From Ophelia neglecta (lineage: Eukaryota), in NCBI GenBank assembly GCA_965285935.1, contig OZ260661.1:113088001-113152000 (forward strand): a stretch of DNA of 64,000 nucleotides, given 5' to 3'. A model generated the notes under the pieces. The model did not search any database. It saw only the letters and a program-made list of their open reading frames with translations, and was not told the DNA's origin. Every line of letters begins with the position of its first letter. Position 1 is the stretch's first letter. Positions 38,301 to 52,687 of this stretch are shown piece by piece. Made by a program: the position numbers and the translations under genes.

Positions 38301-40767
38301 TAAAGCCGCAAAGTAAATTTTGTTTAGATATGCCTGTCTCTTGCATTATAAGATAAGATAAGATAATGTTTATTTTAAAATAGAAGCTTTCAGCAGAAAA
38401 GCTACTATTGATTATCGTTTTAACCATAACTATGCCTATTTATGCCTATTATAAGCGACCTATAATTCTGTCAGTACAAAAAAAGGTGAAAAATCATGTT
38501 TTATATACGCTTAGGCGACCCTCTATAGGCCTACCTGTACAACCAGACACGCTTTCAAAAACCTCTCTTTTCCAAAGCAAATCCTTCCCAACCCGCGGTT
38601 AATAATTCCTTCATTGTTGGAACGAGGAGAGTCAACCTAAATAGATAGTCTAAACACAAAACCGAACTTAACACAAATCTTCGAACAGTGGTCTTTATCA
38701 ATAGATTTTATGACTTGATCCGATTTTGGCTTTTGCTATTTTACCCTATTGAGTAGAGTCGCTCGGAAGGCTTGTAAACTGTTGGACAAAGCCCCATGAA
38801 TCTCATCTCACCAACGCACGTGTCCCTTTTGTTATGCGCCTTGCCCCGCTCGGTCTTTTTCTTCTTCGCATGGCAATAGCAAGTTTTTAAAATGTGACCT
38901 GTACACCTTCTATGGTTTTCAAATACTTGATTTTATTTGCTTCGGTTGTAAATGACTGCTACTGAATGTAAGATGGGTAAAGACATGATTTTGGTGGTAT
39001 TGCATTGCAACATAAATTGAGTCGCAACTGCAAGGAAAACCTCGACAAGGAACGTCCAAGGGGTGCTAACATCCAATTGTAGAACAAGATGCCGTGATTA
39101 ATTGCAATTTTCCTTCTCCAAGGGTGGTTTTGTTGAAAAAGGTTGATATTGATTGAGAATCAGTATTGCTATTATCGCCCATTTATATGCAAATCGCTGT
39201 TGCTCCAATCCCACTGTGCAGCCGATTGTTCTGTGTCTTTCAATAAAATCCTCGCCTTGTTTTGCTATTGCCTTCTATTTTCCGCTTACATTTCCCAGGA
39301 CGAAATGAAAAGATTGCCGAATAATGGCGACAGCTTCAGCATGGGCCCGACCATCTGTCCGGGGACAGATAGCTCTGTTTTTCTCGTTAGGGCAGGATTG
39401 CTGCAATCGTTCAGCCCATTTAAAAATAAATTATCCGTCTATTTGTGCAACAGTTCAATTGAAATTGAATTTCATGGGATAATTTGGAGCTGATTGATTA
39501 CGATGGCAGTAGCTATGATAATCGATCTGTGTTTTAACAGGAAACACAATTCGGAATCGAGTACGTACATACCTTTAATACTAAATCCGACGGGCTCGGA
39601 AAAGAAGCACAACATCATGGGGTTAGGGTATAAAATAATGTTCTAGGCCTATTGTTCAGACTTTATCTTCCTAAATGCTAGATAAATTCACGTATTTAGA
39701 CTATTCTGTGCGTTAGAAATTGAGGAAAATAGAAACTTGGAGGGTTTACGCAAGAATTTGCATGCAGATAAGACACAGCATTCCAGGTCAGTATATAGGT
39801 ATTTCAATGGAGGTAATCCTTGAGGGGTTAGTTGGCGCGAAAGGACTTTTTTCAATCTTTAATCTGGATATTGAGTACACTTAAGAAAACCAAGAGCTGC
39901 AGGCTTGAGATATTATAGTTTAGAATTTTTATTTAAAATAGAATTAGTTAGTCAGTTCTTTTCACTTTTATCGCGCGTTGCCATTCGTTTGCTTGTGGGT
40001 GACATACAATCATTTACAAAGAAGAAAATCCCGATTTCCTTTGCTGTCATTTTCTCATTGAGGTACTTTGGCAGATGAAGTGGGGAGTGTAAGCGATGGA
40101 GAGCCCTGGCAGGGCAATTCATCTTCATTAATGAGACACCAATCGGCGGAAAATGACGGTTACAATGCCCCTGTCGTGCTCTTGACTGGCACAAGACGGG
40201 TGATGAGCGATATTGGGGTTGCTGACGGAGGTCGTCTGTTGGTCCGATCTTCCAGCCGCCCGGGCACGTCTTATCGGCGTCGCCCCCTCCAGTGCCAAGC
40301 GTGCCCGAGGGAGATAAGCCCGAATCAAGAGCCCGACTAATCAAAACAATATTTCTAGCAGAAATTCGCACTCCAGTGACACATGCTGTGAATAATGTGT
40401 CGCGCTATCTCGGTCCAACAGAGGTTCTTCTATTAGCAATATCGCACCCCAAATGGGCTTTCAGCCACACAATTCACATTGCCCGAAACGGGACATAGCC
40501 TTTGTGGAATTGGAAAATTCGCTAGATACGTGCTGCTTGGGAAATAATGCAAAAATTCCTTCTATTGCTTGCTGAAACTAGGACTCACTCGGAATATTCA
40601 GCGTCAAAAAGCACTTGAATGATCAGCGACCGAAAGTGACACCAGCATGGTTGTCAAGTACCGCCGATCTGTCCGCCATGTTGGTGCAGATCAGAAGAAA
40701 CGAGAGGTAGGCATCGGCACGACTCCTAAATATATGCGGCCTCACACGGTCCGCCCAATGTCTATAT

Positions 40768-41340
40768 CACAGTAGGCAACGTGATATACTCACCGACGAC
40801 TTCCGGTCATGTTTGCGGGATCACAACAAGCACATGTTCGTGTTTTGATGGAACGGCAGGTAAGTAAATTATAATTTTCACAAACAAAGAAGCTTCTGAT
40901 TGATAAGATAATTGACCCCTGGAAAAAACATACGTTTAGTTTCCTTGTAATGAAATCTCAGTCCATGCCATCATTAAATGTATCGGTGAGAGACAATTTT
41001 CTGACCTCCCCTGACGCGGCTAATTGACAAGTAGTTGTTTCCCTCGATAAGGAGCTAATTACCTAAATCCCATACTTTTGGTCGACATATTCATGTAAAG
41101 TAGGTCCTATTTGTTAGTCCCATATATATTTGCCCGGTAAGAAAAATCTGAATTAGCCAGAAACAGGCTATTTATTGTTTTACTTGTTGTCGCTACTGAC
41201 GGAGTTGGGCAGCCACAACAAACGGCGCGACAGGAAAAGTGATGTGCACATCGGACGGAGGCTTAAATGTACAAAACATGGCAATTTATTGTTTTGAAGC
41301 CTTCTGCAGATTCTAGCTCTTCGAAATTTATCACGAACTG
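40768..41340 (+). repeat. Left terminal inverted repeat (573 bp)
   Basis: Reverse complement of 43712-44284; contains ETS-type ACTTCCGG (40799-40806), ATG GAA CGG CAG and a CAG|GTAAGT donor (GT at 40860). Confidence 0.95.
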
Positions 41341-41433
41341 TAACCATTTGCTCCGCGAGTAGTCGTTCCCACTATCCCGTGCGTTTATATTACTGGTATA
41401 TGATTGAATTAGACAATTCTAGCACATTTACAG

Positions 41434-42150
41434 ATAAGAGTCGACATCCATCATGGAATCAATGGTGTTATGTGGTTATTGCCCCTATTCTGGATATTTA
41501 CCGGATGTGATAGTACATTTAATTACTGGACACGCAGAGAAGAAGGTTAAGGTTAGGGAGAAGCTGTTGTGTGATTTTGTTCGGGCGGCCAGATACTAAT
41601 TTGTTTATCTTTACAAAGTCTCCACATTTTCAAGCAGTTAATCTGAAATGTTTTAAAAAACGATATCATGCCAAATTTTTCATAATTTCAAACTTAATTA
41701 TTAAGAAGCCAATATTAAAGGGAACATGTAATTGCAGACATATCCTGTATCAATGTATTTTTGTATGTGAACATGCTTTTGAGAGAGAAAATCCAGCCAC
41801 GAGAAGAAGCATCATAACTGAATCTCCAGAAACTCTTCCTTATATTGATATCGAGTACGCGTTTCTCCTAAAGTAATCTACCCGCATGCCTACCAGAAGT
41901 TAACATATGGTCATAATTTACCTCCCTGTAGCTCATGTATTGTTTGAAATATTGCAATAATTGCAAGTGCACTTGACATACACTATACACTAATTGGGGA
42001 TAATATGATATTTTAATTTTTGAAATTAATGAAATCATTTTTATGTCATAGGCCTATTTAAATAAATATGTACTATTTCCTTGCAGGGATCATTTCTTTG
42101 ACTCAAGTCATAGGAGACGCGGAAAACAGAAACGTCGCCGAGGGGAATAA
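41434..42150 (+). pseudogene. Internally deleted spliced gene of the transposon (probable transposase remnant): N-terminal zinc-finger-like exon plus two C-terminal exons
   Basis: Acceptor tttacag|41434 and ATG at 41453 in Kozak context give MESMVLCGYCPYSGYLPDVIVHLITGH... (Cx2Cx11Hx4H; stop at 41599). Exon 41738-41872 (135 nt, phase 2/2) joins in frame to exon 42087-42150, giving ...YAFLLK|DHFFDSSHRRRGKQKRRRGE*. AATAAA at 42217-42222. No catalytic core is present. Confidence 0.55.
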
Positions 42151-42770
42151 GTGGGCCAGACGAGCCCTCTCGACATATAATTCAACATAAACAGTTAATT
42201 GTAATCTTACCGGGCGAATAAAATTCCATGTAAACAACGTAAACTCAGTCCTAAGTTTATTGAAATAAGAATGCACAAAACATTCTACAAGATCAAGAAA
42301 ACGAAGGAAATAGTTTTCATATCTTTACAACAAATAATTTAATGTAAATCACAGTTAGTGCATTTGGCAAACAACTTGGTACTATATTTGTAAATGTTTA
42401 AAAAATAAACCATAAAAATACCTGAGTAAATACAAATACTTTGGTTACATATTCAGAAATAAAGAACAGTACACATACTTGGGTCCATAGATTTTCATCA
42501 TTTGACATACTGGTATATGTTTGATTCAACTATATCCTATTAACTGTTATCAAAAATAAAGTTATAAAGTAAAAGAAAATTGAACAGACACTTAAGGTTT
42601 GGAAAAAAAATAAAAAACTTGTTTCACTTAATATAATGTGTATGGTAACTTCCCTTCACGTGAACAATAAAATGGGACAAGCCAGGACGAAAAATAAACA
42701 AATACCTTGTTGACTAATACAATAAAAGAATAGCACACAAGTTAATACCAAAAAGTTCAACATTTAACAA

Positions 42771-43525
42771 TCACACATTTATTTGGCATTTTTGAAAGTG
42801 ACGTTTAAAGCTGGTCCTCCACCTGAAACGTTTTCCGCAGTTACTGCAACGGTGTTTTGGTTCTTGGTGTGGTGTCATATGTCGGGATAGTTTTTTCTTA
42901 GTGCCACTTCCAGTCAGCAAATGTCACATGCATATTTATTTGGTCTGTGGCAGTTCGTGTGTTCCTTCAAGCTTCTCTCATACATTTTTCTACAGCCTAG
43001 TTCTTTGCACTTAAATGGTTTCATCCCTGCATGTTTATTCACATGTCCTTGATATAAACTCTTTCGTCAGTAAAAGATTTATTACAAATGGCGCAGTGAC
43101 GTTGATTCCTTTGGTATTCACTCTGCTCACTGTGAGCATGTTGTGTATGCCATTGAAACTTATTCTGACTCGCAAATAAAAGGCCGCAAACTGGACAAAT
43201 CACAGGCTCATTTTCCCCGTGCACGCCTGTAACATGCTGCTTCAGGTCCGAAGGTAGAGCAAACTTTGACGGACAAAGACTGCAGACATTTTCCCTTGAG
43301 CCGTGCATCCTTTGCAGGTGTTTTCTGAAAGGGTCTCTGTGCCTTATTTGGAAGTGACATTCAAGGCACTGGTAACCCTTCAATGTCGGGGTAGCCTTTG
43401 CGGTCATTTTTTCCTTCACTATTTTTCCCATGCTCAGCGGTGGAGTCGCCTGTCCCTTGGTCAACCTCCTCCTCATAAACATTGAGGCTGGAGTCAAGGG
43501 GAGATATTGTGACTGCCATTAGACT
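42771..43525 (-). pseudogene. Tandem C2H2 zinc-finger gene (7 fingers), disrupted, inside the transposon
   Basis: Acceptor ctttctttttttacag|43525, ATG at 43519. Fingers CLEC..H..H, CSLC..H..H, CPVC..H..H, CAIC../QGHVNKH, linker AGMKPF, CKELGC..H..H, CDIC*../LSRHMTPH, CSNC..H...C, then TGA (42773-42771). Frameshifts at ~43050 and ~42893 (probably also ~43380), in-frame TGA at 42916-42914; AATAAA on the minus strand at 42261-42256. Confidence 0.9.
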
Positions 43526-43711
43526 CTGTAAAAAAGAAAGATGAGAAGTGCCTTAGATTAGTTATACCTTCATAGGCCTACATTATAGTATGTATGACAA
43601 GTGGAAGTAAAAATGTGACGCATATATTTTATGTTTGGCAGCCTTCCAAATAGAATTTTTTTCATCTTTTAATTTCAAAGGTGTTTATTGCAATACAATG
43701 CTACCAGAATG

Positions 43712-44284
43712 CAGTTTGTGATAACTTTCGAAGAGCCAGAATCTGCAGAGGGCTTCAAAACAATAAATTGCCATGTTTTGTACATTTAAGCCTCCGTCCG
43801 GTGTGCACATCACTTTTCCTGTCGCGCCGTTTGTTGTGGCTGCCCAACTCCGTCAGTAGCGACAACAAGTAAAACAATAAATAGCCTGTTTCTGGCTTAT
43901 TCAGATTTTTCTTACAGGTCATATGTATATGGGAATAACAAATAGGACCTACTTTACATAAATATGTCGACTAAAAGTATGGGATTTAGGTAATTAGCTC
44001 CTTATCGAGGGAAACAACTACTTGTCAATTAGCCGCGTCAGGGGAGGTCAGTAAATTGTCTCTCACCGATACATTTGACGATGGCATGGACTGAGATTTT
44101 ATTACAAGGAAACTAAACATATGTTTTTTCCAGGGGTCAATTATCTTATCAATCAGAAGCTTCTTTGTTTGTGAAAATTAAAATTTACTTACCTGCCGTT
44201 CCATCAAAACACGAACATGTGCTTGTTGTGATCCCACAAACATGACCGGAAGTCGTCGGTGAGTATATCACGTTGCCTACTGTG
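43712..44284 (-). repeat. Right terminal inverted repeat (573 bp)
   Basis: Reverse complement of 40768-41340; CCGGAAGT at 44246-44253; donor GT at 44192-44191 on the minus strand. Confidence 0.95.
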
Positions 44285-47200
44285 TATATGGATTTGTTCT
44301 GGAAGGGCAAGCAAAAAATGAACAACTGCTTAAACAGCAAGAATTGGTCCACGTCCCTATATTTACCGTGATACATCGGTAAATAAGCGGGTAAACTTTG
44401 ACCCCCGTCTATTGTAACCCTATCTATCTTTGGTCTCAACGACAGTGACTTAGCCCGAGTCTGATCAGTTTAACCACGCCTTTTCTCTCTTGTGAGAAAC
44501 AAATTAATTAAACCGTCAACGTTACAGATCTAGGCCTATACCTACAATGGGACTAATGGTGAAGTGCTGAGTTGTTGTTTTAATTATGTATACATAAGCT
44601 TACATATTAATTATTGTGACCAACCTGAGAGTTTGAAGTAATGTATCAAAATGTAACTATGTCATTATTTCATTGTTCTCTTTCATTGATGATGCCGACC
44701 ATGCTAATTATTATGTTATTTTGTGATACATTCAGACAAATGATGACATTAGTATTCTGAATCTTTGAAACAAAGGGCCTTTTGTTAGTAGGCCTATATC
44801 AAAGGGGATTACAGTAAAGAGAGAAACTTATTCTGACAATTTTCCAAACTTTCAGGTATCTCCCAAATTGGCAATATCTGTACACTATGTATGTTAAATC
44901 AATAGTTGCCTAGTACTAACTCGCCCCCGGACAAATTCGTGCTGGACCCGTACGTGTATACAAGAGCATTCACCACGTCGTATATAGACTGAGACAAATA
45001 TTTTGGCTGGACACACAGCCCCTCGGCACCTTCTGACCGTTCTATTTTTGCCCAACTACAAATCTCAAATGACTAAACAAGCACTTGGGTTTTGCACCCA
45101 TATAAACTTAACAAAAAAATCTCCTACAAAGTTAGGTAACTATATTTCAGGCACACCGGTGGCCATATGATTTAGGCCCATCGTCCTGTACTCTTCAGAT
45201 TCGAGAAATATTTAAGGAAAAATCAGCTGGCCAATAAATAATAATATACTTTTATGGGAACTCAATTATTATATTAACCCGTGATCGAGTTCAGTGACTT
45301 TTCAGTCAGAGCTCGCAATGTTAAATGCTTGTCTATATAGTCATCACAAATTCCAACAAGCTTGTATTGAAAATGTTTTGATCAAAACGGTTTTAGGAGG
45401 AGCCTATTGCCGATAAGCTCTTAAACGTACATAGCCACGCGCGCTGTTGGTAAACTTATTGCAAAGCTCCAAAATTGCTGTCCTTTCGCCTGTGTTTGTT
45501 CTTTACCAGGTAAGTTTGCACGAAGCTTTATCACAACTCGAGGGGAGGATAAACCAGCTTTGCCATTATTCAATTTGATATGATGAGTAAACGCGATTAT
45601 TGTTTGAAAATATCAAAATTGTATATTTAGACTTGTGTGTTCAAAGTATCTGCGACGCGTGCGCGGACAATGCCGGTAGCTTCTTAGGGTCGGAATAAAC
45701 ATAGATTAGACACTTATACTCAAATTAAGCCTATTAGCGTCGTTCTAATTCCGGATGAATTTGTATCCTTACTAACAGCGTTAAGCGGAGCGGGGTGAAC
45801 TTTATAAACTGTCAACAGACTTTAACTAACTGTTCAAGTGCAAAGCTCAGACTCGATCAAGTAAATATCTCTTATTCCGTGTAAACAAGTTACGAGTGGC
45901 CGGGCATATTCATACGCCATGGTAATATAGGTGTAAAGTGCTTACACTGTTCTCTGCTTTCTATAGGGCTACCTTAACAGCAATAGAACAGTCACCACCA
46001 GATATATATATTTTAAAAAAGACCATGACACAGCACCAGGCACAATGGACCATTTTCTCATCTAACAAGATTGCAAAACCAATGACATTGGAGACTTTTT
46101 CATTTGCTCTAATGTGTTCCCTTGATATCATTCGGTGAATGAAAATCATCGCGGAGATCTGAAAGCGGCCGAAATGAGAGTTTTCTAAGGAAGCTATGCC
46201 ATGTCGTGACATTCAATGCCCCTCGCATCAATTTTTTCCTCAAATTATCATCTCTTTTCGCATTCCCGTCCTCCACAACATAGAATCTTTCATGAACGTA
46301 ACAAAGCAACTTTTGTGTGGTTTCCTGAAAGAATATAATGTATGCCGCTCCGAATGTTCTTTGGTATATACTGGGTCGGCTGGGACCAGAAGACCAATGT
46401 TTCCATCAAAGAATACAGGCGCACTGGGTGTAAATTTCTAGCTGGAGGGATTCAATTCAGCTGAAAACGTCCAAACTTGCTAAGTGGTCCTCCAGAAAGG
46501 CTACCCGGAGGAAAACTTATGTTCCGGTTTTCTAAAGGACCCCTTAATGCTTTCCACTATGCATTCAAACAGGGCTGCGCCTATCTGCCAAACTTGACGA
46601 GTCGAACACACACAAAAGCACAATAGGCAATGTTTGCAAATAGTAGAATTCTTCGTAAGACATGAAACAGCCCGCCAAATGTGTAGAAGAGAAAGAGGAC
46701 CGCTGTGAAATAAAGAAAGGGGATATCTATATGAGTATCTTGTTAGCCATTTGTCGAGCACGCCCGATTAGTTCCGGAGAATATCGAGCGGGTGCATGCC
46801 ACTTTAGCCTACGGAGCACCACTTTAGTCTGGACCTGGACACAATGTACCCCAAGCTGCCCCCTACTCAATGCCATTGTTGGGGATATGATAAAACGGAC
46901 ACATTCTGGATGTGCATTTTTCAACCTGTCCATTGATAGGGCAGAGGATGCCCTAAGGCGGGCAGCCCACAAGAACAAGTGCCTCGATCACTCCTAAAAC
47001 CCGTCGCGCCGTGGACAACATTTTCGTAACAGTTTTAGCTGTTATCTGGCTCTAAAAAAAAATCAATTATAACCGAGAAACATCGGACAGTAAATAGGCC
47101 TAGCGAGCGACAAGCGGGCAGTCGAATATAACAGCGGAGCGAGCTTATTAGATGTCACGGCTAGGCCTCTAGATGGAAACAAAATGCATGGAAATGGTAC

Positions 47201-51151: not shown

Positions 51152-52687
51152 GTGACTATTGCAAAGTTTGGGTTCATTCCAGGAGACTCAACTGTAAACA
51201 AGATACTTCATATTTGTCAAAACATTTACCGAGCTCTGGACGCCGGGGACGAAATGCTGGCGATCTTTCTTGATTTTTCTAAGGCATTTGACAGAGTTTG
51301 GCATGCTGGTCTTTTATATAAACTTAGGATGCTTGGCATTCGTGGTAAAACACACAAGTGGCTGGCAAGCTATTTGCATTGTCGTCGACAGCGGGTAGTA
51401 CTTCCCGGGGGAATGTCGTCGTGGGGAGAGGTGCCTGCCGGTGTGCCACAAGGGTCGGTTCTCGGACCGCTCTTGTTTCTGATATATATAAACGACATTG
51501 TTGATGATATTCAGTCCGATGTCAATCTTTTTGCAGACGACACTTCCCTTTTCTCCAGGATAGAGCAGGGCAAAACAGCGGACGCCTGTCTCACTCTCAA
51601 TCGAGACCTCGAACATGTTTCTCAGTGGTGCAAATCGTGGCATGTGGGCATTAATGCTAACAAAACTAAATGTTTGCTCATCAGCAAAAAAACGGTCCCT
51701 TCGCCTGCTTTTCCCTTGATTTTAAACAGTTCTGTACTCGAGCTTTCTGAAACAGCTACCTTTCTTGGCGTTATCTTAAATAACAGAGCTACATGGGACT
51801 CTCATATCAATGATTGTATTAAAAAGGCAGCCCTCCGTCTTAACCTTCTAAGACCACTAAAATATAAGTGCTCTAGGAAAGGTCTGGACATGGCTTATAA
51901 ATCCTTTGTGAGACCAGTCTTGGAATATGGCAATATTGTCTTTGACAACTGCGACAACTATTTAGCTCGTAGTCTTGAAGGTCTAAACTTGTCTGCTGCA
52001 AGGCTAGTCTGTGGTGCTCGACGTGGCACGTCTCACCAAGCTCTTCTCTCTGAAGTCGGTTGGGCCTCTCTCTCAGACCGACGTACCTATTGCAGACTCA
52101 TGAAACTGCGCAATATAGTCTTTCAGCAGGCACCTCAGTATTTACTTTCCCATTTACCGGCGAAGGTAAATCATCGCCATAACACACGCTCATCTCTCAC
52201 GTTGAAAATTCCTTTAATGAAGTGTCGAACTGAGTATTTTAAATCATCTTTTTTCCCCAAAACAATATCTGAATGGAACTCCCTGCCTGTTGAAACACAA
52301 TTATTACCAACTTCCCTTGCTTTCAAACGTAAAATAAACCCTACACCTGGTCCACCTCCCGTGTTTTACCATCTGGGTTCACGCCCAATCAATGTTTGCG
52401 TGGCACAAATGCGACTCAATTGCAGTGAGTTACGCTACCATTTGTACTGTAATCACTGTGTTGAAAGCCCACTGTGCGAGTGTGGTGAGGAAAGCGAGAC
52501 ACCCTTTCATTATTTCTTTTGTTGCTTGCGTTTTGCGGCTCCCAGGGGCGCCCTGCTGGACTTTCTGCACTCAAATGGTATACCAGTGTCTGTTGCATCA
52601 ATTCTCTATGGTACAAAAAATTCAACTATTAATATTAGATTAATGTCTACCCTTGAAACATTTATACAATCCACTAGACGGTTTTAA
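51152..52687 (+). CDS. LINE ORF2 C-terminal part: reverse transcriptase plus C-terminal Cys/His motif (lacks endonuclease and a true start codon)
   Basis: Motifs GF.PGDST, FLDFSKAFDRVWH, GVPQGSVLGPLLFLIYIND, LFADDT, FLGV, YKSFVRPVLEY, SFFPKTISEWNSLP and CECG..ET..HYFFCC; uninterrupted for ~505 codons. The first few codons are flanking DNA. Confidence 0.93.
   Translation: MTIAKFGFIPGDSTVNKILHICQNIYRALDAGDEMLAIFLDFSKAFDRVWHAGLLYKLRMLGIRGKTHKWLASYLHCRRQRVVLPGGMSSWGEVPAGVPQGSVLGPLLFLIYINDIVDDIQSDVNLFADDTSLFSRIEQGKTADACLTLNRDLEHVSQWCKSWHVGINANKTKCLLISKKTVPSPAFPLILNSSVLELSETATFLGVILNNRATWDSHINDCIKKAALRLNLLRPLKYKCSRKGLDMAYKSFVRPVLEYGNIVFDNCDNYLARSLEGLNLSAARLVCGARRGTSHQALLSEVGWASLSDRRTYCRLMKLRNIVFQQAPQYLLSHLPAKVNHRHNTRSSLTLKIPLMKCRTEYFKSSFFPKTISEWNSLPVETQLLPTSLAFKRKINPTPGPPPVFYHLGSRPINVCVAQMRLNCSELRYHLYCNHCVESPLCECGEESETPFHYFFCCLRFAAPRGALLDFLHSNGIPVSVASILYGTKNSTINIRLMSTLETFIQSTRRF

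What the first reader, a model, noticed from the sequence alone, without database searches (positions are those of the whole stretch)
40763..44289. Long-TIR CAC-ended transposon with two tail-to-tail genes, one a poly-C2H2 zinc-finger array
Seen: 573-bp TIRs (~96.5% identical), ends CACAGTA (one base from the RSS heptamer CACAGTG), TATAT flanks, a + strand spliced gene remnant and a - strand 7-finger gene whose poly(A) signals face each other ~35 bp apart (42217-42222 on +, 42261-42256 on -). Known: CAC ends with a 5-bp TSD characterise Transib and ProtoRAG/RAG-like transposons; RAG-like elements carry RAG1L/RAG2L tail-to-tail, but their TIRs are short and the partner is a kelch-type protein; MuDR drives convergent genes from TIR promoters but has different ends and TSD. 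Inference: this may be a deletion derivative of an undescribed two-gene family in which a C2H2 array is the accessory gene (for TIR recognition, target selection or autoregulation). Caveat: TATAT is also compatible with a 3-bp TAT TSD, pointing to Chapaev3/EnSpm-like groups.
Basis: partly seen in the sequence, partly recalled or inferred. Interest (0 to 1): 0.85.

Follow-up and report, generated by a model that had tools for sequence, protein, structure and literature searches.

The report
Young two-gene transposon remnant, 5-bp duplications
This is a real, recently jumping 3.5-kb DNA transposon that has lost its cutting enzyme but keeps a decaying zinc-finger gene. Its ends look like those of the transposons from which the antibody-gene recombinase RAG arose, yet its gene remnants point to a different, apparently undescribed transposon family.

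Summary
Window 40768-44284 is a 3517-bp element with 573-bp inverted ends (96.5% alike), CACAGTA...TACTGTG tips and TATAT on both sides.

It is a transposon family, not a local duplication:
- The assembly holds 11 near-full copies (2.75-3.6 kb, 98-99.6% alike), one old 6.5-kb copy and two mini-derivatives.
- 13 of 14 insertions have perfect 5-bp target duplications, all different.
- Public reads hold the empty allele of this very insertion, which skips 3522 bases (3517 + 5).
- The 3-bp alternative is refuted.

No copy encodes a transposase. The 7-finger C2H2 gene is intact in two copies. Eight of 11 copies, the window's included, share a frameshift yet kept transposing, so the gene is not needed in cis.

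The two-gene layout recurs in two much older relics.

The first and last coding exons of the + strand gene resemble the ends of a ~5-kb gene present at four loci. Two of those loci show a 956-aa frame with a YqaJ nuclease domain. Earlier notes of this scan describe, on other DNA of this genome, a long-TIR transposon with such an enzyme and a convergent zinc-finger partner.

The deletion-derivative idea is therefore supported. The RAG/Transib affinity rests only on the ends and the 5-bp duplication.

The parts
40763..40767 (.). left copy of the 5-bp target site duplication (TATAT)
   Evidence: The empty allele in reads joins 40762 to 44285, leaving one TATAT.
40768..41340 (+). left terminal inverted repeat, 573 bp, tip CACAGTAGGCAACGTG
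   Evidence: In every copy one end is 99-100% and the other 96-97% like this arm, so most left/right differences predate the burst.
40768..40859 (+). predicted shared leader exon within the TIR, followed by donor GTAAGT at 40860. It contains ACTTCCGG and has CpG o/e 1.1. Prediction only.
   Evidence: Sequence. In the older subfamily the donor reads GCAAGT. No RNA evidence.
41166..41295 (+). two copies of a 16-nt motif (GGCWATTTATTGTTTT, 41166-41181 and 41280-41295) inside each TIR. Candidate protein-binding site.
   Evidence: The first copy is partly conserved in the 73%-identical subfamily. Function not tested.
41434..41551 (+). gene A, first coding exon. ATG at 41453, a single C2H2-like finger (C-x2-C-x12-H-x4-H), donor GT at 41546 or 41552.
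   Evidence: Identical in 7 copies. 44% identical over 32 aa to a motif inside 331-aa frames at four loci.
42087..42222 (+). gene A, last exon. A basic, NLS-like tail of 59 aa is open in most copies and ends at the AATAAA. In the window copy it is cut short by a 1-nt deletion at 42147 and a 49-nt deletion at 42172.
   Evidence: About 88% conserved against the 73%-identical subfamily. 54 protein-level relatives in the genome.
42771..43519 (-). gene B, a seven-finger C2H2 gene, broken here by three frameshifts. Acceptor AG at 43527-43526, ATG at 43519-43517, stop at 42773-42771.
   Evidence: The intact 247-aa form is L035:1065-1808:+.
43712..44284 (-). right terminal inverted repeat with the mirrored leader and donor (exon ends at 44193)
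44285..44289 (.). right copy of the 5-bp target site duplication (TATAT)

Best explanation
This is a non-autonomous, internally deleted member of a long-TIR, two-gene cut-and-paste DNA transposon lineage. The ancestral element carried gene A, a large transposase-type gene, converging on gene B, a seven-finger C2H2 gene. Both genes probably start from the same promoter and leader held in the two TIRs. In this family gene A is reduced to its first coding exon (one C2H2-like finger) and its last exon (a basic tail). The enzyme must therefore come in trans, from a full-length relative that is either absent from the assembly or not yet recognised. Insertion makes a 5-bp staggered cut at AT-rich c|WNWAT|g sites. 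The zinc-finger protein is not needed in cis. If it has a role, it is a trans-acting DNA-binding partner or regulator of the TIRs. Shown: the transposon, its copy number, the 5-bp TSD, the polymorphic insertion, the absence of a transposase, the decay of gene B, the age of the two-gene layout, and the homology of gene A's two exons to the ends of a YqaJ-bearing gene. Inferred: which enzyme moves it, the TIR promoters and splicing, and any function of the zinc-finger protein.
For: Mobility: 11 near-full copies (2.75-3.6 kb) 98-99.6% alike, one old 6.5-kb copy and two mini-derivatives. 13 of 14 have perfect, different 5-bp TSDs. Reads of one sample hold both the filled allele and an empty-site contig that skips 3522 = 3517 + 5 bases, at similar depth. 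One flank in the reads matches none of the assembly's insertions. No transposase: only C2H2 Pfam hits in any frame, and a 25-nt terminus search finds no longer copy. Gene B is dispensable in cis: +2 at aa 152 is shared by 7 copies and -1 at aa 204 by 8. Substitutions show no codon-position bias (6.9, 7.7 and 9.7% variable at positions 1, 2 and 3, against 6-8% in non-coding parts). The layout is old. The relic L029 (73% nt identity) has TIR, gene A's last exon, then a gene B remnant (aa 15-52 and 186-224, 67% identical) on the opposite strand. C2:94.969-94.970 Mb has gene A's last exon on + and gene B (47% identical) on -. Gene A is a deletion remnant: at C2:66.41, C5:72.63, C7:27.76 and C12:33.50 Mb an exon-2-like motif inside a 331-aa frame lies 5.0 kb upstream, on the same strand, of a last-exon-like peptide (E 1e-7). 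At the C2 and C5 loci a 956-aa frame between them matches Pfam YqaJ above its cut-off. Earlier notes of this scan (s1-734085, s1-734102, s1-739942) describe such a transposon in this genome, with long TIRs and a convergent zinc-finger partner.
Against: Their ends, TSD length, TIRs and any zinc-finger partner are therefore unseen. They are only 44-47% identical to gene A's two exons, so they are a sister family rather than the parent, and cross-mobilisation by them is doubtful. The exon-2 match alone is weak (E 0.19) and gains weight only from its position. The Pfam model of the P-type RNase H domain does not hit those loci, so the 'P-like' label of the earlier notes is untested here. P-type elements normally make 7-8-bp TSDs. 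CAC ends with a 5-bp TSD are the published hallmark of Transib and RAGL elements, which the genome holds in recently duplicated form.
Confidence: 0.55

Rival explanations
1. A non-autonomous element of the Transib superfamily in the wide sense (Transib or RAG-like), moved in trans by a resident RAG1L/RAG2L or Transib transposase that recognises the CAC heptamer. Genes A and B would be cargo unrelated to the enzyme.
For: 5-bp TSD and CACAGTA tips, one base from the RSS heptamer. In 2005 Transib was described as the only eukaryotic superfamily with 5-bp TSDs (PMC1131882). The target form c|NNNNN|g recalls Transib-N1_AG. The genome holds three RAG1L-B subfamilies (up to 265 bits to PF12940; best PDB match is amphioxus RAG1L, E 5e-127) and RAG2L. 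One pair of copies is 99.8% identical on two chromosomes, which suggests recent movement or duplication. Non-autonomous RAGL elements are on record (PMC7204232).
Against: Positions 8-10 are GGC, not the A-rich block conserved in RAGL-B TIRs. The one resident RAGL-B terminus found is CACGAACAAATGTTCC. There is no A-rich nonamer after a 12- or 23-bp spacer. Targets are 19% GC, whereas Transib and RAG prefer GC-rich sites. The element shows no DNA or protein similarity to any RAG1L or RAG2L locus fetched. No Transib-type transposase turned up with PF12940, though this is a weak negative. Gene A's exons are homologous to the ends of a different large gene.
Confidence: 0.3
2. A Pack-type element: a TIR pair of some family that captured fragments of host genes (a zinc-finger gene and a small gene), with no functional tie between cargo and transposition.
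For: Gene B decays neutrally in the copies and is dispensable in cis. DNA transposons that carry host genes are common.
Against: No close host parent exists: the best match outside the family is 42% identical, against a 30-37% background for C2H2 arrays. About 1.8 billion representative proteins gave only generic 27-35% matches. The same two genes in the same convergent layout occur in lineages 27% or more diverged. Gene A's exons match the ends of a multi-copy, mobile-looking gene rather than a single-copy host gene.
Confidence: 0.08
3. A local inverted duplication, not a mobile element.
For: None beyond the inverted repeat itself.
Against: Fourteen insertions on six contigs with different 5-bp TSDs, and an empty allele.
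Confidence: 0.01

Closest known systems
Transib transposons and their non-autonomous TransibN derivatives (Kapitonov and Jurka 2005, PMC1131882)
   Same: 5-bp target site duplication, 5'-CAC...GTG-3' heptamer-like tips, non-autonomous copies outnumbering autonomous ones, and a target of the form c|5 bp|g.
   Different: TIRs of 573 bp against about 38 bp of conserved terminus. No nonamer-like A-run. AT-rich rather than GC-rich targets. Transib elements are stated to encode a single protein (PMC4411706), whereas this lineage has two genes. No Transib-type transposase was linked to it.
RAG-like (ProtoRAG / RAGL-B) transposons (PMC7204232, PMC10462144)
   Same: Two convergent genes between TIRs and a 5-bp TSD. 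ProtoRAG's full-length TIRs act as promoters, and a C2H2 protein (host YY1) binds them and restrains transposition (PMC7481187). That is the nearest functional analogue for a TIR promoter paired with a zinc-finger factor.
   Different: The genes are not RAG1L and RAG2L. The tip lacks the A-rich block at positions 8-10. The resident RAGL-B terminus differs. Here the zinc-finger protein is encoded by the element itself, not by the host.
The long-TIR two-gene transposon with a YqaJ-bearing transposase and a convergent zinc-finger partner, noted earlier by this scan on other DNA of this genome (s1-734085, s1-734102, s1-739942). Its follow-up found no published description.
   Same: Long TIRs, convergent two-gene layout with a zinc-finger partner, and a leader shared through the TIRs. 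Relatives of gene A's terminal exons flank a YqaJ-bearing 956-aa frame.
   Different: This family has lost the enzyme-coding middle of gene A. I could not compare ends, TSD or the partner gene. The P-type fold is that note's claim, and the Pfam P-type model did not hit the loci.
ISL2EU elements of the PHIS superfamily (PMC4482050)
   Same: Two-gene DNA transposons that include a YqaJ-domain protein.
   Different: ISL2EU makes AT dinucleotide TSDs, has TIRs that begin with GG, and keeps YqaJ in a separate second ORF. Here the TSD is 5 bp and the ends are CAC.
Two-component plant and animal DNA transposons with a DNA-binding accessory protein (En/Spm TnpA, PIF/Harbinger Myb-like ORF1). Comparison from general knowledge.
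   Same: A transposase plus a separate DNA-binding protein. Deletion derivatives retain part of the coding capacity.
   Different: Different TSDs (3 bp), different ends and unrelated proteins.

Membership tests
Transib superfamily | 5-bp target site duplication | tested here: met
   13 of 14 insertions have perfect 5-bp repeats, all different. The empty allele skips 3517 + 5 bases.
Transib superfamily | termini 5'-CAC...GTG-3' with an RSS-like heptamer | tested here: met
   CACAGTA / TACTGTG in all copies.
Transib superfamily | A-rich nonamer-like block 12 or 23 bp after the heptamer (38-bp consensus terminus) | tested here: not met
   Positions 20-28 read TACTCACCG and positions 31-39 read GACTTCCGG. 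Criterion from PMC1131882.
Transib superfamily | a Transib / RAG1-core-type transposase in the family or in an autonomous partner with matching ends | tested here: inconclusive
   None in any copy. No longer copy has these termini. All PF12940 hits are RAGL-B genes with no similarity to the element. The flanks of two RAGL-B subfamilies could not be read.
RAG-like (RAGL-B / ProtoRAG) transposons | convergent RAG1L and RAG2L genes, or remnants of them, between the TIRs | tested here: not met
   No DNA or protein similarity to the RAG1L or RAG2L loci. Only C2H2 Pfam hits.
RAG-like (RAGL-B / ProtoRAG) transposons | TIR with CAC followed by a conserved A-rich block at positions 8-10 | tested here: not met
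   Positions 8-10 are GGC. The resident RAGL-B terminus CACGAACAAATG does have the block. Criterion from PMC7204232.
   TSDs are 5 bp at 13 sites with unrelated sequences. The empty allele confirms it.
Long-TIR two-gene transposon with YqaJ-bearing transposase and zinc-finger partner (scan notes s1-734085, s1-734102) | long TIRs enclosing two convergent genes, one a zinc-finger protein | tested here: met
   573-bp TIRs. Gene A on +, the seven-finger gene B on -.
Long-TIR two-gene transposon with YqaJ-bearing transposase and zinc-finger partner (scan notes s1-734085, s1-734102) | the large gene holds a YqaJ (lambda-exonuclease-type) domain | tested here: met
   Met by relatives, not by this deleted copy. 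YqaJ hits (34.9 bits, cut-off 22) in 956-aa frames at C2:66409745 and C5:72627667 lie between the exon-2-like and last-exon-like matches on the same strand.
Long-TIR two-gene transposon with YqaJ-bearing transposase and zinc-finger partner (scan notes s1-734085, s1-734102) | P-element-type RNase H catalytic fold | tested here: inconclusive
   PF21787 gives 35 hits in the genome but none at the four loci. The fold could not be predicted because the sequence could not be fetched.
Long-TIR two-gene transposon with YqaJ-bearing transposase and zinc-finger partner (scan notes s1-734085, s1-734102) | same termini and TSD length as this element | not tested
ISL2EU (PHIS superfamily) | AT dinucleotide TSD, TIRs beginning with GG | tested here: not met
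   5-bp TSD and CAC ends. Criterion from PMC4482050.

The most novel reading that the evidence does not exclude
The element is the non-autonomous form of an undescribed DNA-transposon lineage. Its enzyme would be a large RNase-H-type transposase with a built-in lambda-exonuclease-type (YqaJ) nuclease, working beside a C2H2 partner gene. This lineage, not Transib or RAG, would make the RSS-like CAC ends and 5-bp duplications seen here. That would be a second, independent route to the end chemistry thought to be peculiar to the RAG/Transib line, still active in a living animal population.
Probability: 0.3. Interest if true: 0.8.

Novelty: new variant of a known kind. Interest (0 to 1): 0.6.

Why it matters
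Three points matter.

1. The insertion in this window is still polymorphic. The reads hold a further insertion site and a variant copy that the assembly lacks. An enzyme that makes 5-bp duplications at RSS-like CAC ends is therefore active, or was active very recently, in this animal. Natural substrates of that kind are scarce outside insects and lancelets.

2. CAC ends plus a 5-bp TSD are routinely used to file elements under Transib/RAG. Here the coding remnants point to a different enzyme family with a YqaJ nuclease. If that holds, the hallmark is not exclusive, and TIR-based counts of RAG-like elements in invertebrate genomes need care.

3. The family is a natural experiment on an element-encoded zinc-finger partner. 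The partner is ancient in the lineage but dispensable in cis. This makes its role (trans-acting cofactor, repressor or passenger) directly testable, by analogy with host YY1 on ProtoRAG TIRs.

Tried and rejected
- RAGL-B as parent: blastn and tblastn of the element against 16 RAG1L/RAG2L loci gave only one 35-nt AT-rich match, E 0.001. Rejected as parent.
- CACAGTAGCAGAC at C12:73088419, next to a RAG2L gene, looked like a RAGL terminus. It is the centre of an unrelated palindromic MITE with 64-bp arms and 25 or more copies. Dead end.
- The 6.5-kb copy L041 as autonomous element: it is an old copy with two nested insertions and a deletion, and no transposase.
- Orthologues of the zinc-finger protein: the word-based search found none at E 1e-10 or better. 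The exhaustive HMMER search gave only generic C2H2 arrays at 27-35% identity. PDB gave ZNF568, CTCF, YY1 and similar at 38-66 bits. No specific family.
- RNA evidence: no RNA run was offered. The three runs laid are DNA contigs of one sample and show no intron joints. Splicing and TIR promoters remain predictions.
- Rfam on the element gave no match. The conserved last-exon region folds no better than shuffles, z = -0.14.
- Exact-sequence look-up of the zinc-finger protein in public assemblies: not on record.
- A read variant that leaves the element at 41573 has no match in the assembly with up to 3 mismatches.
I did not try to read those letters by other means.
- PF21787 (P-type RNase H) does not hit the four loci.
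- Selection on gene B: no codon-position bias and many indels. Survival of two open copies fits chance, since 5 of 11 copies carry no private indel in the gene.

Full report
OBSERVATION

The inverted repeats are exactly as described. The arms are 40768-41340 and 43712-44284, 573 nt each, with 20 mismatches, no gaps and 96.5% identity. The element (40768-44284, 3517 bp) begins CACAGTAGGCAACGTG and ends with the reverse complement of that. TATAT lies directly outside both ends. A further - strand AATAAA lies at 42783-42778, beside the zinc-finger stop codon, so the picture of facing poly(A) signals is only one option.

IT IS A TRANSPOSON FAMILY WITH A 5-bp TSD

- A search of the window's own genome (762 Mb) with the left arm found paired arms at 12 places and shorter pairs at two more.
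- After fetching them there are 11 near-full copies of 2.75-3.6 kb, one old 6.5-kb copy, and two mini-derivatives of 694 and 101 bp.
- Thirteen of the 14 insertions are flanked by a perfect 5-bp direct repeat. All differ: TATAT, TGAAT, TGTAT, TGTAC, AGTAT, GTTTT, ATATT, TGTGT, TCAAC, ATAAT, ACTAT, AATGT, ATAAC. The old copy has TTAAT and ATTAT.
- The sites are AT-rich (19% GC against 39% for the window). They have the form c|WNWAT|g.
- A search with the 25-nt tip, allowing three mismatches, finds only these copies and a few one-ended old relics.
- The copies are 98-99.6% identical. The window copy is closest to the one on C9, at 99.6%.
- In every copy one arm is 99-100% and the other 96-97% like the window's left arm. 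Most of the 3.5% difference between arms is therefore older than the burst.

THE INSERTION IS POLYMORPHIC

Three public runs of one sample hold the family. All three are DNA, kept as contigs. Laid on the window, each has a contig that joins 40762 directly to 44285. It skips 3522 bases, which is 3517 plus one TATAT. Its depth (10, 21 and 25) is of the same order as that of the contig for the filled left flank (11, 36 and 36).

- Loose ends at the left tip carry other flanks. One matches the old copy L041. One matches none of the 14 assembly sites, so the sample holds at least one further insertion.
- A contig also leaves the element at 41573 into sequence that the assembly lacks.

CODING CONTENT

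No frame of any copy resembles a transposase.

Gene B, on the - strand:
- It has a canonical acceptor six bases before its ATG (43519).
- In the C20 copy it encodes 247 aa with seven C2H2-type fingers. The last finger is C2HC and four fingers have non-canonical linkers.
- Its relatives in the PDB and in 1.8 billion representative proteins are generic C2H2 arrays. The best match outside the family in this genome is 42% identical.
- The gene is open and free of indels in two copies only.
- An insertion of 2 nt at codon 152 is shared by seven copies. A deletion of 1 nt at codon 204 is shared by eight. The window copy and its C9 sister share three more indels.
- Variable sites are as frequent in the gene as in non-coding parts and show no codon-position bias.
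- The lineage with a broken gene B produced most of the copies, including the still-polymorphic one. Gene B is therefore not required in cis.

Gene A, on the + strand:
- Its first coding exon (41434-41551) holds a single C2H2-like finger. Its last exon starts at 42087.
- In most copies the last exon is open for 59 aa and runs into the AATAAA (L035:2360-2536:-). The window copy is cut short by a 1-nt deletion at 42147.
- A phase-compatible join of the two exons is not evident, so the transcript structure is unresolved. No RNA data could be had.

THE TWO-GENE LAYOUT IS OLD

- Relics on C2:12.34-12.83 Mb are only 73% identical in the TIR but begin with the same tip, CACAGTAGCCAACGTGATATACTCA.
- One of them (L029) has the TIR, then gene A's last exon, then on the opposite strand a gene B remnant covering aa 15-52 and 186-224, 67% identical.
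- The last-exon region is about 88% conserved against those relics, well above the 73% of the TIR.
- A third relic at C2:94.969-94.970 Mb has gene A's last exon on + and gene B on -, 47% identical.
- The zinc-finger gene is therefore an ancestral part of this lineage, not a recent capture.

WHERE GENE A COMES FROM

- The 59-aa tail has 54 relatives in the genome. The first-exon finger has a few weak ones.
- At four loci that give identical match scores on four chromosomes, both occur on the same strand 5.0 kb apart. These are C2:66407892 to 66412906, C5:72629853 to 72624780, C7:27760029 to 27754955 and C12:33501358 to 33496285.
- There the finger lies inside a 331-aa frame.
- The chance that a match of E 0.19 falls within 6 kb upstream of one of 54 loci, on the right strand, is about 4e-5 by my estimate.
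- At the C2 and C5 loci a 956-aa open frame between the two matches Pfam YqaJ above its cut-off.
- Gene A of this element is therefore what is left of a large gene of that type after an internal deletion, which is the usual origin of non-autonomous elements.

Earlier notes of this scan, on other DNA of the same genome, describe an 8.4-kb recently mobile transposon. It has long TIRs, a transposase with a nested YqaJ nuclease (called P-like by fold) and a convergent zinc-finger partner. Another note records convergent genes that share a leader duplicated in the TIRs. These notes changed my reading. I tested the YqaJ link, but not the fold, the ends or the TSD of those elements. The Pfam model of the P-type RNase H domain does not hit the four loci, which settles nothing.

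THE RAG/TRANSIB QUESTION

- The genome does hold RAG-like transposon genes: three RAG1L-B subfamilies and RAG2L. One pair of copies is 99.8% identical over 4.4 kb on two chromosomes.
- By aligning two RAG2L-side flanks I could place one RAGL-B terminus. It reads CACGAACAAATGTTCC, with the A-rich block at positions 8-10 that Martin et al. describe.
- The present element has GGC at those positions. It has no nonamer-like A-run, prefers AT-rich targets, and shares nothing with the RAG1L or RAG2L loci.
- Ends and TSD therefore fit the Transib hallmark. Three other features, and the coding remnants, do not.
Mobilisation by one of them stays open.

HOW IT MOST LIKELY WORKS

- It moves by cut-and-paste, using an enzyme supplied in trans, and inserts with a 5-bp stagger at c|WNWAT|g sites (shown, apart from the identity of the enzyme).
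- The two TIRs probably each provide a promoter and a short leader. The signs are a CpG-rich first 150 bp, an ACTTCCGG motif and a GTAAGT donor at position 93. The leader would be spliced to gene A on one strand and gene B on the other (inferred).
- ProtoRAG gives a precedent: its full-length TIRs are promoters and are bound by the C2H2 protein YY1, which restrains transposition (PMC7481187).
- The zinc-finger protein, made by the few intact copies, may bind the TIRs. A 16-nt motif occurs twice per arm. This is speculation. The data show only that the protein is old in the lineage and dispensable in cis.

VERDICT

- I rate the finding a new variant of a known kind, interest 0.6.
- There is a 0.3 chance that it marks an undescribed lineage which shares the RAG/Transib end signature without the RAG/Transib enzyme.

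Noticed in passing
L045 (G000:C8:1111810-1116264) vs L049/L051 (G000:C2:83631931-83636282): Two RAG1L-B copies on different chromosomes are 99.8% identical over the whole 4.4 kb held, apart from a 101-bp indel. One has an open 583-aa frame. This suggests very recent movement or duplication of a RAG-like transposon.
   Followed up: partly
L069:413 and L068:2827 (reverse strand): The similarity between two RAG2L-side flanks ends sharply at CACGAACAAATGTTCC (CATGAAC... in the other copy), about 1.3 kb upstream of RAG2L. This is a likely RAGL-B terminus, with the published A-rich block at positions 8-10. The other end and the TSD were not seen.
   Followed up: partly
L070-L081, e.g. G000:C8:47628480-47628634: A palindromic mini-element family with 25 or more copies. 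It has two 64-bp arms facing each other across about 20 bp, with CACAGTAG at the inner ends. A longer form lies twice, 1275 bp apart, next to the RAG2L gene on C12.
   Followed up: no
G000:C2:12.34-12.83 Mb (L028-L030): At least seven same-strand relics of an older subfamily of this transposon lie 21-140 kb apart. Two have 98% identical flanks, so they lie in a large segmental duplication array rather than being separate insertions.
   Followed up: partly
window 41573 (reads only): Contigs of runs X1 and X3 follow the element up to 41573 and then continue into sequence absent from the assembly (TCTCTACCGGTAAAATG...). This may be a copy with a nested insertion, or the full-length parent.
   Followed up: partly
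window 51152-52687 (+): A 511-aa open frame with a reverse transcriptase domain (RVT_1, E 2.5e-26): a retroelement 7 kb downstream of the transposon.
   Followed up: no
L041:6729-7085 (-): The old 6.5-kb copy sits inside a reverse-transcriptase-like open frame that runs into the TIR. It also holds two nested insertions of about 1.8 kb each, without long open frames.
   Followed up: no
G000:C8:23993595-23994170: An open 270-aa frame is 42% identical to the element's zinc-finger protein, clearly above the 30-37% background of other C2H2 arrays. It may be a host paralogue, a source gene or a domesticated copy. It could not be fetched.
   Followed up: no
window 41166-41181 and 41280-41295 (mirrored in the right TIR): A 16-nt direct repeat (15 of 16 identical) lies 114 bp apart inside each TIR. 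By my rough estimate the chance expectation is about 0.01.
   Followed up: no
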